NCBI GenBank assembly: GCA_965113315.1
Contig: OZ220368.1
Source of the DNA: Podarcis vaucheri
Lineage: Eukaryota
Strand: one strand, 5' to 3'
Length of the DNA: 64,000 nucleotides
Shown piece after piece: positions 27,190-31,817 of this stretch (position 1 is its first letter; every line of letters starts with the position of its first letter). A program made the position numbers and the translations under genes. A model generated the notes under the pieces. That model saw only the letters and a list, made by a program, of their open reading frames with translations, did not search any database and was not told the origin of the DNA.

Positions 27190-27259
27190 TATAAAAGAAG
27201 CTAGGAAGGCGCACACTGTCATTGCAGGAGGCGGCTCACTAGAGATCTGCTAGCAACAA
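27190..27259 (+). promoter_or_regulatory. PTH4: PTH4 TATA box, initiator and non-coding exon 1
   Basis: TATAAAAG at 27190, Inr-like TCATTG ~30 bp downstream (A at 27221), donor CAA|GTAAGA at 27259/27260 and an alternative GTAAGT donor at 27309. Confidence 0.6.
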
Positions 27260-28044
27260 GTAAGACTCCACAAATCAACTTTACCATACTCCAATACAAG
27301 AAGAAATAGTAAGTACTCTACATTACACTGCTATTTTTAACCTGTTGGGCTTAAAACTCTATATACCCTTACCAGGACATAAGCCCCATTGAACTTATTT
27401 CTGAGTAGACATGTATAGGGTTGCACTGTTAAATATTTTCTTTCAACTAATATTTAATTAAGATATTGTCGGTTATATGTAGCTATACAAATATATCTCA
27501 AATATATTATTGACAAAATCTGTCAATAAGTGATTACAGTACTGGAAAAATTGAACCAATGGCTTGTGCCATTCAGGATGTATTTTGTGTATTCACATAT
27601 TTCTAGAAAACCAGTTCTGGTTCAGATCAGAATATTTGTTTTGTTCCCTCCAAAAGCAAACAATTTTATATACCTGTACATATTATGCTATTGATTTTCA
27701 TAGGCTATACTAACCTGAGTGAAGATTGCAGTAATATATTTATGACAGGAATATTTGGAATATATATTTAAAAGATGGTTTTCTACTGTTTCAAATTAAA
27801 ACCTTTTGTGTCCTAATATACAAATAAAATACACTACGAAATTATTTGGCTTTTGTCGTCACAGTAAATATGAAAAGGCAAATAATAAATTTTTTAAAAA
27901 ATTATATATTTCAGGCCAATACTTACTATCTGTCACTATGGTTTAATTTTACTATCCATTATTTAAGTGGAATATGTTATAGCTGCAAGTTGCATTTCAA
28001 TGTCCATCTTATTTCATCTTGTTTAATAGTTTACAAGACAGAAG

Positions 28045-28133
28045 ATGCTTTTGTCCCAAAGATATCTACAGATGGTAACATTTTTGTCCATTTTTTTCCT
28101 TGTTTGGTTTGCAACATGTCAAGAAACAAAAAC
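28045..28133 (+). CDS. PTH4: PTH4/PTH-L coding exon 1: signal peptide and propeptide
   Basis: Acceptor TAATAG|28030. ATG at 28045 gives MLLSQRYLQMVTFLSIFFLVWFATCQETK + AC|GTAAGA: a hydrophobic signal with an A-x-C cleavage site, and a phase-2 donor that matches the next exon. Confidence 0.88.
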
Positions 28134-29019
28134 GTAAGAATATTTTTTAGTTAAATTTTTGATAAGCTTTATTTTACTATGATGGGGTTTGGGGTTTTGT
28201 TTTTTTACTGTGTTGACTTTTGGATGCAAAATGATAACATTGCAGTAAATCTTTACAATACAATGTATTTTTCTGAAGATCACTGTGCAAACATATGTTT
28301 AGCATCGTTTGTAATTTTTAAAATGATTTTTCTTTAAAATGTGATACATTTGGAAGGTGCTTTTAAAAACAAGATTATCCTGTACTGAAAGTCATAAGAT
28401 AGCAAAGGGAAAGGGCAAAGTCTTCTTGTTGTTAGAGCTTTCCAAGATGGTTCCGAAAACTATAAAGTGATCTTCTGTTCATTCCTAGATAGTGGTGATA
28501 AGGGCGAGAGAGCTACCTCTTTTAACACATCAAAGCACAAATCCATAGCTAAATCAGAAACAATGAAGGCAGCTACATGTTTTATTCACATGTCTGTCCT
28601 GTTCACATATATTAGCCTGGTTTAGACATAATGGGAAACCAGTTGCTCACCACATGAGTGAGCCCACATGAACCTCAGGCTCACATGGTCTGCTGGTCAT
28701 AAGGTTAGTACCTCTTGCTACAATCTCTCCAGTCTGGGCATAAAGAGGAACTGCGGCTTATTTAAAAATGGAAGCTTCCAATCTCCTTGTGGCCACGGGA
28801 GACAGATGCATAGAAACTTGAGACTCATACAGGCTCTTTCATGGAGTTTCCCATTATGGAATCATGGTTTCCCATGTGGTAGTCGTGACATGAAAATGGG
28901 TGCATGGAGCAGGAAATATGACCCCCCCTTTTTTTTACCCCCTGCACTCCATCAGTCCAGTTTATGGAGCAAGGAGTACACCACCACTTTATTACAAAGA
29001 TGGAGCACACACACAAATA

Positions 29020-29262
29020 CAGTGGTACCTCTGGTTATGAATTTAATGAATTTAATTCGTTCCACAGGTCCATTCTTAACCTGAAACCGTTCTTAAACCG
29101 AGCTACCACTTTAGCTAATGGGGCCTCCCGCTGCCACCGGCATGCAATTTCTGTTCTCATCCTGAGGTAAAGTTCTTAACCTGAGGTGCTACTTCTGGGT
29201 TAGTCGAGGCTGTAACCTGAAGCGTCTGTAACCTGAAGCGTCTGTAACCCAAGATACCACTG
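29020..29262. mobile_element. Tc1/mariner (Tigger-like) MITE in PTH4 intron
   Basis: TA|CAGTGGTACCTC...GATACCACTG|TA with internal (AACCTGA) subterminal repeats. Confidence 0.85.
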
Positions 29263-30448
29263 TAATAAAGAAATGTGACTGCCACCATCATGTCTAACAA
29301 AGGACACAGGAACATATTTATAATGAATCAGACCATTGGTCCATCCAGCGAAGCCCTAACCACTCTCCAAGGTTTCAGGCAGGAGAGAGGTGAGGCAGTG
29401 GGGAGGTCGGCGTGGTTCAAATGCACTGGCAGAGCCAATCCGATGCATTTGGTGGTGTGTTTGCACTGCACTGACCTCTATGCCACTCTACCCCTCAAAC
29501 ACAGATGTTGGGAGGTCAGGCACCATCCCCACCCATGCTGTCCACAACTGGATAGGAGTCTTTCCCAAGTATGGCCCTCAGTGGGCTCTCTTTGATCAAT
29601 GGTACTATAATGAACAGACAGGTTTTGTGAATAATAGCTAGCTATGCCACCTTCACTTTACACAGCAAAAAAGTCACTGGATAGAAACTATAATGCAAGA
29701 ACCTGAAAAGGCCATGTGAACAGTGACAATGCTAATATGCTTGTACAGTAATCTGTCTTTTCATATATTAGGCTAAAGTTGGTTGTGCATCTATCAGTAA
29801 CTAACCTTTACTGAATTTTAGGTTTCCCAGTTTGAAACAAAACTCCAAGTTCAACACTGAACACTCATCTAATATTTGCTAAAGGGTAGCCATGAAAAGG
29901 TTTCTTAGCAAGAGATAGGGAAATAAGAAACATCTGTACAAATTCAGACATGAAAAAAATCAATTCCATTGAATTCAGTGGAACATATTCCAAAACAAGC
30001 ATGCATAGAACTGTAGCCTTACAGTCCAATCCTATACGCCTACTTAGAAGTAAGCCCTACTGAGTTCAATGGAACTTATTCTGAGGTAGTGTTTATAGGA
30101 TTCCAGCCTTAAAGAATTACAAATAAAGGCAGATGAGGAGCTGTGGGACAATGACTTGCATAGCTTTGGGGACTGTCAACTTTGCATTGATCAGTCCAAT
30201 TCTACAAAGAAAATAATGAATGCAGATGTCAAACGTCTGAAGTGGTCGGCACTGGTTCAGACCCCAGGAATACCACACACTACTTTTGCAAGCACTTAGA
30301 TGGCACCAGATAGTTCAACAAGATTGGACACAATCCCTTAGTGATCTTGGTTTCCTCATCTTTAACTAATATACTTGAAATGTTTTCTTGCTTTATTGTG
30401 AATGTGTTTCTGCTTCTCAAGCACAGTACTGGCTTTTTCACATTTCAG

Positions 30449-30839
30449 TAAGAGAGGAGTGGCAGAATTCCAGTTCTTGCATAACAAAGGAAATCTCCGT
30501 GAAGAGTTAAACCGACTGATTTGGCTCCACCAAGCTATGGGAGGAGTGCACACAGCCGTGGGCAGGGACATCCCACAGGCACACATTGTGTGGACCTCAC
30601 CAAAGAACGAAGACCTCTCCGATCTCTCTGATGGAACTGGCAGAGAAGAGTCTCTAGAAATGATGAAGCAACTGCTGCTGGGATTGCTGGAGAAGGAAGA
30701 GCCTGTTGCTGTCCTCAGGAAAACAAATGTGTTGCAGTATCTAAAGAATGTAAAGGGTAATCAGGACCGGCAAGACCTTTCTGACATATTTCAAGGTGGA
30801 GATCAAGATGGCAAAAGAAATCTCAGCACCCAGACATAG
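30449..30839 (+). CDS. PTH4: PTH4/PTH-L coding exon 2: KR cleavage site and 127-aa mature region (precursor 159 aa)
   Basis: Acceptor TTTTTCACATTTCAG|T AAG AGA. KR is followed by GVAEFQFLHNKGNLREELNRLIWLHQAMGGVHTA, which has the PTH-family V2/E4/Q6/H9/G12/R20/W23/L24/H32-T-A signature. It lies between SRSF3 and STK38; candidate AATAAA at 31281. Confidence 0.92.
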
Positions 30840-31817
30840 ATTTCCTGACCGAACCTATTGCAGTCCATCTGCTACTTGAGATATATACACTGAGGGAGAT
30901 CAAAAGAAAAGTTGATTAACAAAGAAAATGTGCGTTTGTGCCATTTACTACTCCTTCGCATTGTTGAAAGGCCAGAACATTTCCCCCTTATTCCGATTAT
31001 TAAACAGGAATGTGCAGGGCTTAAAATTTTCCCTTCTAGATAGCACAAATATTTTATAACTGTTAGCAATATTGCCAGGGGCTATATATTATTATTGCTA
31101 CTTCACTCCTTTGCATTTGTTGAACAATATTATTGAGGTATTTGTGCATGCAGGTTCTGCTGGGGTACATGGAAAGTATTCACTCTTTGTCCCTTATACT
31201 CATTTCCTGCTTCCACCACCTATATAATTACTTGAGGTCTTTTGTGCCTGTTCCCCTTTAGCAATGTGGGTTTAAGTTATAATAAAGCACATGGCTGAGA
31301 AAACACCTAGGCTGGAAAGCAAATTCAAATGTTCTATAATACATTTTTTTCATGTAAAAATGCATACTTCTAAATATGCACCCCTGGTTCTTTGAGCATA
31401 TTAATGTTGTCTCCTTACTGCAGAAAGAATACGTCTTACAGTAAGATTGGAATCTTAGGCAAACAAGAATAAGACCCATTGAACACCATGGGACTTACTT
31501 TTGAGTAAACATGCATTGGATCAGGCTGCAACAATTATGACCTACTTAAGGTTTTCATCCAGAATAATGCCTCAGCCTATCACCCACATCTAGCTGATTA
31601 GAACACTTAGTAGAAAAGCCCAAATATACATATTTTCAAATGTAAAAACATTCTGCTGCAACTCTGAAGATGTGGAATTGAAGCAACCATTGCAAGTAAC
31701 TGGTTAGCTGCTTGAACAACATATTTCAGATACTACATACCTCTGGAAGAAGTATGCTGAGGGTTCCCACTTTCCAGAGGGATGAAAAGGTTTTGTTAGA
31801 AGAGTTCCAAAGTCTAT

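What the first reader, a model, noticed from the sequence alone, without database searches (positions are those of the whole stretch)
27190..31290. Intact PTH4/PTH-L hormone gene hidden between SRSF3 and STK38
Seen in sequence: TATA and a UTR exon, an 89-nt signal-peptide exon missed by the ORF track (28045-28133), and a phase-2 splice that joins in frame to exon 30449-30839. The precursor is MLLSQRYLQMVTFLSIFFLVWFATC-QETKTKR-GVAEFQFLHNKGNLREELNRLIWLHQAMGGVHTA...(159 aa). Established: this is the PTH-gene architecture (UTR exon / prepro exon / KR plus mature exon), and Pth4/PTH-L is a PTH-family paralogue retained in fish, amphibians and sauropsids but lost in eutherians; zebrafish work links it to brain-to-bone mineral regulation. 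Inference: this is the squamate orthologue, little studied in reptiles and easily mis-modelled from the spurious upstream ATG at 30402.
Basis: partly seen in the sequence, partly recalled or inferred. Interest (0 to 1): 0.8.

Follow-up and report, generated by a model that had tools for sequence, protein, structure and literature searches.

The report
Lizard PTH4 hormone gene, diverged tip
This is an intact lizard copy of parathyroid hormone 4, a known gene already annotated in many other reptiles, but in this wall-lizard lineage its receptor-activating tip has changed unusually fast and gene models miss or mis-build it.

Summary
On the + strand there is a TATA box (27190-27197), a putative 5'UTR exon ending at a GTAAGA donor (27259|27260), a signal-peptide exon (28030-28133, ATG 28045) and an exon with the KR site and mature peptide (30449-30839). 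The join is in phase 2 and gives a 159-aa precursor.

Exon 3 hits Pfam Parathyroid (E 1.3e-8). Its best relatives are proteins that NCBI names 'parathyroid hormone 4-like' in Elgaria, Varanus and other squamates, birds, axolotl and lungfish. A maximum-likelihood tree puts it inside a squamate PTH4 clade (99/99), apart from PTH and PTHLH. SRSF3 lies upstream on the - strand and STK38 downstream, matching the published PTH-L/SFRS3 linkage in chicken and Xenopus.

- **No correct lacertid model.** The only two found are an ORF call from the spurious ATG at 30402 and a mis-spliced Ensembl Podarcis muralis model.
- **Fast-changing mature peptide.** Mature residues 1-34 differ from the squamate consensus at 15 of 34 positions, against 18 of 93 for the rest. 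Every other taxon shows the opposite pattern. Four positions invariant elsewhere are changed.

Expression is not shown: two RNA runs gave no reads on the exons.

The parts
27190..27197 (+). TATA box (TATAAAAG) of the putative promoter
   Evidence: Read directly. The surrounding 27070-27461 differs from a related lizard at only 4 of 392 bases, against about 3.1% in introns (P 0.005).
27220..27259 (+). Putative non-coding exon 1 (5'UTR). The start is inferred from the TATA spacing. The end is set by the donor CAA|GTAAGA.
   Evidence: Sequence signals only. It contains no ATG. No RNA support.
28030..28133 (+). Exon 2: 15 nt of leader, then ATG at 28045 and 89 coding nt for the signal peptide and the start of the pro-region. 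The intron is in phase 2.
   Evidence: Translation. It matches the N-terminus of Elgaria PTH4-like at 22/29 residues, E 3e-13. The hydrophobic core at residues 10-24 has a Kyte-Doolittle mean up to 2.66. Acceptor and donor consensus.
28134..30448 (+). Intron 2 (2315 nt). It holds a high-copy SINE-like repeat at about 29016-29264.
   Evidence: GT..AG ends. About 3% divergence from a related lizard, against about 1% or less in the exons.
30402..30448 (+). Spurious upstream ATG and intron read-through in frame with exon 3
   Evidence: ORF 30402-30839. P0001 is this ORF called in a relative. The stretch is the pyrimidine tract and acceptor, conserved in many squamate ORF calls.
30449..30839 (+). 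Coding part of exon 3: the last base of the Thr codon, the KR cleavage site, the mature peptide (127 aa) and the stop TAG
   Evidence: Translation. Pfam Parathyroid E 1.3e-8. PTH4-like hits at E 2.5e-53. Tree placement.
30456..30557 (+). Mature residues 1-34, the receptor-binding and receptor-activating domain, strongly diverged in this lineage
   Evidence: 15/34 differences from the squamate consensus against 18/93 in the rest, Fisher p 0.006. H5F, D10N, Q16E and K19N fall at positions invariant in 16 other PTH4 sequences.
30840..31305 (+). 3'UTR with AATAAA at 31281-31286 (the end is approximate)
   Evidence: Signal read. The stretch 30713-31125 shows 1 difference in 413 bases from a related lizard (P 3e-5).
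20848..21054 (-). Upstream neighbour: first coding exon of SRSF3 (RRM), transcribed away from PTH4
   Evidence: Found in the frame scan. The best solved-structure match is SRSF3 at E 3.9e-33, against SRSF7 at 1.5e-25.
39809..43898 (+). Downstream neighbour: exons of an NDR-type kinase, STK38 (39809-39958 and 43554-43898)
   Evidence: Kinase motifs in the frame scan. The best solved-structure match is STK38 (6bxi) at E 2.3e-29; the next kinase scores 4e-16.

Best explanation
The locus is the lacertid orthologue of parathyroid hormone 4 (PTH4, formerly PTH-L). It is a three-exon gene, with one non-coding and two coding exons, lying between SRSF3 and STK38. It encodes a 159-aa prepropeptide.

Inferred mechanism:
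- The signal peptide (about residues 1-25) sends the precursor into the secretory pathway.
- A furin-type convertase cuts after the KR that opens exon 3, releasing a mature peptide of about 127 aa.
- The N-terminal 1-34 helix of that peptide binds and activates class-B PTH receptors (PTH1R/PTH3R type) and raises cAMP, as shown for chicken PTH-L(1-34).

The lacertid peptide keeps the residues shared by the whole PTH family: V2, E4, Q6, L8, G12, R20, W23, L24 and H32. It carries about 15 lineage-specific replacements in 1-34. It is therefore most likely still a ligand, but with altered potency or receptor preference.

Shown here: the reading frame, the splice and processing signals, family membership, orthology, synteny, and higher conservation of exons than introns. 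Inferred: transcription, processing, receptor activation and physiological role.
For: - **Reading frame and signals:** exact coordinates and frame.
- **Family:** Pfam Parathyroid E 1.3e-8, above the curated cut-off.
- **Closest proteins:** NCBI 'parathyroid hormone 4-like' of Elgaria (73%, E 2.5e-53), Varanus and Hemicordylus, and Anolis G1KSU8. A profile search finds named PTH4 proteins in birds, turtles, alligator, axolotl and lungfish.
- **Tree:** the window plus P0001 group at 100/100, inside a squamate PTH4 clade at 99/99. PTH4 is one side of a branch at 94/89 and in 100% of 200 bootstrap trees. The PTH clade has 99/96 and PTHLH 94/82.
- **Exon 2:** homology 22/29 to the Elgaria N-terminus, with a hydrophobic core.
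- **Synteny:** SRSF3 and STK38 flank the gene. PTH-L is linked to SFRS3 on chicken chromosome 26 and in Xenopus, and is missing from the matching human chromosome 6 region (PMC3009671).
- **Architecture:** two coding exons is the published PTH/PTH-L structure (PMC3009671).
- **Constraint:** against a related lizard, introns differ at about 3.1%. The promoter and exon 1 differ at 1.0% (P 0.005), and 30713-31125 at 0.24% (P 3e-5).
- **Second species:** the frame is intact and residues 1-34 are identical in a second lacertid (P0001, P0009).
- **Receptor activity of a relative:** chicken PTH-L(1-34) activates PTH1R with EC50 7.7 nM (PMC3483286).
Against: - **No transcript evidence.** Two bulk RNA-seq runs of a related or the same species label, each about 12% sampled and of unknown tissue, gave zero reads on exons 2 and 3. 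No spliced joint was seen in any run.
- **Inverted conservation.** The bioactive 1-34 region is less conserved than the rest of the protein. This could also mean relaxed constraint.
- **Aberrant Ensembl model.** The only Ensembl lacertid model joins an intronic piece, part of exon 3 and a downstream piece. If it rests on RNA evidence, it hints at aberrant transcripts.
- **Untested steps.** SignalP was not available. The 5'UTR exon is prediction only.
Confidence: 0.85

Rival explanations
1. The gene is the PTH4 orthologue but is under relaxed constraint in lacertids. It would be an incipient pseudogene, or a gene that has lost its classical hormone function, whose reading frame is still open only because too little time has passed.
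For: - Mature 1-34 has 15/34 changes against 18/93 in the rest, the reverse of every other taxon. Four positions invariant elsewhere are replaced.
- The lacertid stem branch (0.35) is the longest in the squamate clade.
- There are no RNA reads on the exons.
- No correct gene model was retrieved for any lacertid.
- All three amino-acid differences between the two lacertids lie within a stretch where the laid contig shows only three base differences.
Against: - The open frame, ATG, both splice-site pairs, the KR site, the stop and the poly(A) signal are all intact.
- The residues shared by the whole PTH family are all kept, so the changes are selective and not random.
- The signal peptide is 76% identical to Elgaria.
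- The promoter, the end of exon 3 and the 3'UTR are significantly more conserved than the introns between two lacertids.
- The C-terminal part remains about 80% identical to other squamates.
Confidence: 0.12
2. The gene is a PTH or PTHLH paralogue, or a lineage-specific duplicate of one, and not PTH4.
For: - Against solved structures the 1-34 region scores slightly better with PTHrP than with PTH.
- H9 and N10 resemble PTH.
- STK38L lies near PTHLH in mammals (recalled, not tested), so a kinase neighbour alone would not discriminate.
Against: - The tree separates it from both the PTH and PTHLH clades with support.
- The long C-terminal region aligns only with PTH4 proteins.
- SRSF3 linkage is specific to PTH-L.
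- No paralogue shares more than 5 of the 15 lacertid-specific residues.
Confidence: 0.02

Closest known systems
Squamate 'parathyroid hormone 4-like' proteins (NCBI models of Elgaria multicarinata, Varanus komodoensis, Hemicordylus capensis, Ahaetulla prasina and Sceloporus undulatus; Anolis carolinensis G1KSU8)
   Same: Same gene by tree placement. Similar length (149-166 aa). The signal peptide, KR site and C-terminal region are alike, with 57-73% identity over exon 3.
   Different: Those proteins keep the near-invariant PTH4 1-34 sequence (1-2 differences from the squamate consensus, Sceloporus 10). The lacertid peptide has 15 differences. The Elgaria and Varanus models also carry 7 extra residues before KR, from an upstream acceptor that is out of frame in this window.
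Chicken and Xenopus PTH-L (Pinheiro et al. 2010, PMC3009671) and zebrafish Pth4
   Same: Orthologous family. Both have two coding exons with the prepro-region and the mature region on separate exons, linkage to SFRS3/SRSF3, and absence from eutherians. Chicken PTH-L(1-34) activates PTH1R. Zebrafish pth4 is expressed in hypothalamic neurons linked to bone mineral regulation and to sleep.
   Different: No functional or expression data exist for the lizard gene. Its receptor-activating domain departs from the sequence shared by chicken, axolotl, lungfish and coelacanth.
PTHLH (PTHrP) and PTH
   Same: Same Pfam family. The core residues of 1-34 are shared, as is the KR-preceded mature peptide. The gene architecture matches PTH.
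   Different: They form separate clades, have different C-terminal regions and lie in different genomic neighbourhoods: ARNTL/BTBD10 for PTH and MRPS35 for PTHrP.

Membership tests
PTH family (Pfam PF01279 Parathyroid) | Significant match to the family profile over the 1-34 hormone domain | tested here: met
   E 1.3e-8 and 35.9 bits against a cut-off of 22. Matches to PTHrP and PTH peptide structures.
PTH family | Secretory prepro-organisation: N-terminal signal peptide, then a short pro-piece ending in a dibasic KR directly before residue 1 | tested here: met
   KR opens exon 3. The hydrophobic core and the 76% identity of the exon 2 peptide to the Elgaria signal peptide are. No dedicated signal-peptide predictor was available.
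PTH/PTH-L gene architecture | The precursor is encoded by two exons, with the prepro-region on the first and KR plus the mature peptide on the second | tested here: met
   Published structure in PMC3009671. The junction is inferred from signals and homology, not from RNA.
PTH4 / PTH-L orthology group | Groups with named PTH4 sequences, apart from PTH and PTHLH, in a phylogeny | tested here: met
   Squamate PTH4 clade at 99/99. PTH4 is one side of a branch at 94/89 and in 100% of the bootstrap trees. PTH2/TIP39 was not included, so the tree is unrooted.
PTH4 / PTH-L orthology group | Conserved synteny with SRSF3 (SFRS3) | tested here: met
   The SRSF3 RRM exon lies at 20848-21054 on the - strand. 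Linkage is reported for chicken and Xenopus. STK38 is the downstream neighbour. STK38 against STK38L was not separately tested.
PTH4 / PTH-L orthology group | Characteristic (not defining) near-invariant 1-34 signature shared from coelacanth to birds | tested here: inconclusive
   The family-wide core and the C-terminal half of 1-34 are kept. However, 15 of 34 residues differ from the squamate consensus, and 4 of the 15 positions invariant in 16 other PTH4 sequences are replaced.
Functional hormone gene | Spliced transcript present | tested here: inconclusive
   Zero reads on the exons in two RNA runs at about 12% sampling, tissue unknown. The contig runs look like DNA.
Functional hormone gene | The peptide activates a PTH receptor | not testable with these tools
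   This needs a peptide and receptor cAMP assay.

The most novel reading that the evidence does not exclude
In lacertid lizards the receptor-activating domain of PTH4 was remodelled in a burst of about 15 replacements. This domain is almost frozen from coelacanth to birds. The replacements include His5, Asp10, Gln16 and Lys19, while the rest of the protein stayed conserved. That would be a lineage-specific retuning of ligand and receptor selectivity or signalling bias, possibly co-evolving with PTH1R or PTH3R, and not decay.
Probability: 0.3. Interest if true: 0.55.

Novelty: new member of a known kind. Interest (0 to 1): 0.36.

Why it matters
PTH4 is the fourth ohnologue of the parathyroid hormone family. 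It was lost in placental mammals and has been studied mainly in zebrafish (brain-to-bone mineral regulation, sleep-promoting hypothalamic neurons) and briefly in chicken and Xenopus.

A correct gene model for lacertids fills an annotation gap in a group with several reference genomes.

The unusually diverged 1-34 domain gives a natural variant series for asking which PTH4 residues set receptor preference. Position 5 is recalled, not tested here, as a known selectivity determinant in PTH/PTHrP. The domain could also mark a change in calcium or neuropeptide physiology in these lizards.

The basic finding, that a PTH4 gene lies next to SRSF3, is expected from published synteny and is not surprising to a specialist.

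Tried and rejected
- **RNA evidence.** The look-up of sequencing runs listed no holder on record as RNA. Read laying on 26800-31600 with two contig runs and two raw RNA runs gave no exon coverage and no splice joints. The contig runs cover introns and exons evenly, so I read them as DNA. This leaves expression open and does not show silence.
- **Gene conversion from PTH or PTHLH.** I considered it as the source of the diverged 1-34 and rejected it. No family member among 232 retrieved shares more than 5 of the 15 lacertid-specific residues.
- **Compensated frameshift.** Rejected as the cause of the divergent stretch. Conserved residues are interspersed in register throughout.
- **Upstream acceptors for exon 3.** The AG at 30425-26, which is the position implied by the Elgaria and Varanus models, is out of frame and runs into a stop. 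The AG at 30420-21 would be in frame and add 9 residues, but has no support from most orthologues.
- **Literature.** Searches for pth4 with lizard and pth4 with stk38 found nothing on reptile PTH4. The Suarez-Bregua 2017 paper (PMC5240660) is not held.
- **Earlier notes.** The scan's earlier notes hold nothing on parathyroid genes in this genome.
- Exons were analysed separately by reference. The N run at 18723-19270 inside SRSF3 was left untouched.
- **Typed peptides.** In one search two 34-residue peptides copied from tool outputs were typed into a script.
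Full report
**1. What is in the sequence**

- TATAAAAG lies at 27190-27197.
- About 25-30 nt downstream a short ATG-free stretch ends at a strong donor, CAA|GTAAGA (27259|27260).
- After a pyrimidine-rich tract and AG, exon 2 starts at 28030.
- The first ATG of the predicted mRNA is at 28045, with A at -3.
- After 89 coding nt comes the donor AAC|GTAAGA (28133|28134).
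- Exon 3 follows the acceptor TTTCAG|T (30448|30449) and runs to TAG at 30837-30839.
- AATAAA is at 31281-31286.

Exon 2 translates to a 29-aa peptide with a basic residue followed by a 15-residue hydrophobic core (hydropathy). Exon 3, read from 30450, opens with KR and continues for 127 residues. The split codon AC|T encodes Thr, giving 159 aa in all. The ORF list shows the 145-aa ORF from ATG 30402 that reads through the end of the intron.

**2. Family**

Exon 3 matches Pfam Parathyroid (PF01279) at E 1.3e-8, above the curated cut-off. It also aligns with solved PTHrP and PTH 1-34 peptides.

The word-indexed protein search returned nine proteins:
- NCBI 'parathyroid hormone 4-like' proteins of Elgaria (73% identity, E 2.5e-53), Varanus komodoensis and Hemicordylus.
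- Anolis G1KSU8 and a Sphaerodactylus entry.
- A 98%-identical 145-aa ORF call from a Logan contig (P0001).
- A 109-aa Ensembl-derived Podarcis muralis entry (P0009).

A profile of the squamate hits found 202 relatives. The top 120 are nearly all named PTH4 or PTH4-like, from birds, turtles, alligator, axolotl and lungfish.

The exon 2 peptide is 22/29 identical to the Elgaria N-terminus. Both coding exons are therefore supported independently.

**3. Orthology**

To obtain outgroups I searched the 50%-identity representative library with the alignment. I named ten representatives through cluster look-up:
- PTHrP of Microtus, Pleurodeles and Callorhinchus, and pthlha of Megalops.
- PTH of Lemur, Protopterus, Hippocampus and Callorhinchus.

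The tree was built with IQ-TREE (LG+C20+F+G4) on 52 rows and 160 columns.
- The window exon 3 groups with P0001 at 100/100.
- The pair sits inside a squamate PTH4 clade at 99/99.
- All 17 named PTH4 sequences form one side of a branch (94/89, and 100% of 200 bootstrap trees).
- PTH (99/96) and PTHLH (94/82) lie elsewhere.
- PTH2/TIP39 was not available, so the tree is unrooted.

**4. Synteny**

A frame scan found two neighbours.
- **SRSF3.** Its first coding exon is on the - strand at 20848-21054, and an RS-domain exon lies at 17932-18009. Against solved structures the RRM exon scores best with SRSF3 (3.9e-33), ahead of SRSF7 (1.5e-25).
- **STK38.** NDR-kinase exons are on the + strand at 39809-39958 and 43554-43898. 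The kinase exon scores best with STK38 (2.3e-29; next kinase 4e-16).

A 548-N run at 18723-19270 lies inside SRSF3 and was left alone.

Pinheiro et al. 2010 (PMC3009671) report that PTH-L and SFRS3 are linked on chicken chromosome 26 and in Xenopus. They also report that SFRS3 sits on human chromosome 6, where PTH-L is missing. The same paper gives the two-coding-exon structure for PTH and PTH-L. STK38 against STK38L was not tested separately. I recall, but did not test, that STK38L lies near PTHLH in mammals, which would make the two regions paralogous.

**5. Mis-modelling**

P0001 is the prokaryote-style ORF call from the intronic ATG. P0009 maps to three pieces of the window: 29932-30003 (inside intron 2), part of exon 3, and 31618-31695 downstream of the poly(A) signal. 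It lacks the signal-peptide exon.

No NCBI lacertid model appeared among the 47 word-sharing candidates. The database does hold NCBI models from six other squamate genera. The window differs from both lacertid entries at three residues, so it is a close relative of Podarcis muralis and not that record itself.

**6. The unexpected part**

In the 18-sequence alignment, mature residues 1-34 are almost frozen from coelacanth, lungfish and axolotl to birds and other squamates. The lacertid peptide is an exception.
- Against a leave-one-out squamate consensus, the window differs at 15/34 positions in 1-34 but only 18/93 in the rest (Fisher p 0.006).
- All eight other squamates, and all non-squamates against the overall consensus, show the opposite pattern.
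- Of 15 positions in 1-34 that are invariant in the other 16 sequences, four are changed: H5F, D10N, Q16E and K19N.
- Residues common to the whole PTH family are all kept: V2, E4, Q6, L8, G12, L18, R20, L21, W23, L24 and H32-T33-A34.
- The lacertid stem branch (0.35) is the longest in the squamate clade.
- Additional gecko, snake and skink ORF calls keep the canonical sequence.
- No PTH-family protein retrieved shares more than 5 of the 15 new residues, which argues against gene conversion.
- The interspersed conserved residues exclude a compensated frameshift.

**7. Is it functional?**

*Evidence for function.*
- All signals are intact.
- Residues 1-34 are identical in the second lacertid.
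- Exons are more conserved than introns. Contigs of a related lizard differ from the window at about 3.1% in the two mostly intronic pieces. They differ at 1.0% over the promoter and exon 1 (P 0.005), and at 0.24% over 30713-31125, which covers the end of the coding region and the 3'UTR (P 3e-5).

*Evidence against, or open.*
- Two raw RNA-seq runs, about 12% sampled and of unknown tissue, gave no reads on the exons. Only the intronic repeats were covered.
- No splice joints were seen.

In zebrafish, pth4 is confined to a small hypothalamic population. In chicken no ESTs were found although RT-PCR was positive. Silence in bulk runs therefore says little.

**8. Mechanism**

The most likely mechanism, about 0.85 for orthology plus function, is a secreted prepropeptide.
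- The signal peptide is removed.
- A convertase cuts after KR.
- The 1-34 helix engages a class-B PTH receptor. Chicken PTH-L(1-34) activates PTH1R with EC50 7.7 nM and PTH3R weakly (PMC3483286).

The lacertid replacements probably alter potency or receptor preference. Whether this is adaptive retuning (about 0.3) or relaxed constraint (about 0.12 for real loss of function) cannot be decided here.

**9. Verdict**

The gene belongs to a known family that is widely annotated in squamates, so novelty is modest: a new member of a known kind. Two additions are useful: a corrected model for lacertids, and an atypically diverged bioactive domain worth a targeted evolutionary and pharmacological test.

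Noticed in passing
window 29016-29264 (intron 2 of PTH4): A high-copy repeat. Contig depth sums reach tens of thousands, and hundreds of RNA reads lie partly on it with unlike flanks. It is probably a squamate SINE-type element expressed from many loci. Smaller repeat pile-ups lie at 27283-27443 and 31469-31600.
   Followed up: partly
window 31812-31884 (+): A tRNA-like sequence. Rfam tRNA scores 44.2 bits (E 4e-7), but ARAGORN calls no tRNA. It is likely the tRNA-derived head of a SINE, just downstream of the PTH4 poly(A) site.
   Followed up: partly
window 29932-30003 and 31618-31695 (+): The Ensembl Podarcis muralis model A0A670IHM8 (P0009) uses these two pieces as exons around a truncated exon 3. 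The downstream piece is 26/26 identical. If that model rests on RNA evidence, aberrant or alternative transcripts cross the locus.
   Followed up: partly
window 30420-30448 (+): The NCBI Elgaria and Varanus PTH4-like models include 7 extra residues before KR, which correspond to the translated end of intron 2. The matching acceptor in this window (AG 30425-26) is out of frame. Another AG at 30420-21 would be in frame and add 9 residues.
   Followed up: partly
window 18723-19270: A run of 548 N inside the SRSF3 gene (- strand), between its RS-domain exon (17932-18009) and its RRM exon (20848-21054).
   Followed up: no
proteins P0136 and P0159 (frog PTH4-like representatives): The anuran PTH4-like peptide (Pyxicephalus) is also strongly diverged in 1-34. 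One 164-aa representative (P0136) carries two tandem copies of the hormone domain, each preceded by a basic cleavage site. Lineage-specific remodelling of PTH4 is therefore not unique to lacertids.
   Followed up: no
The GC-rich bin at 6001-8000 (GC 0.55) is visible in the composition profile. It is unrelated to the PTH4 locus.
   Followed up: no
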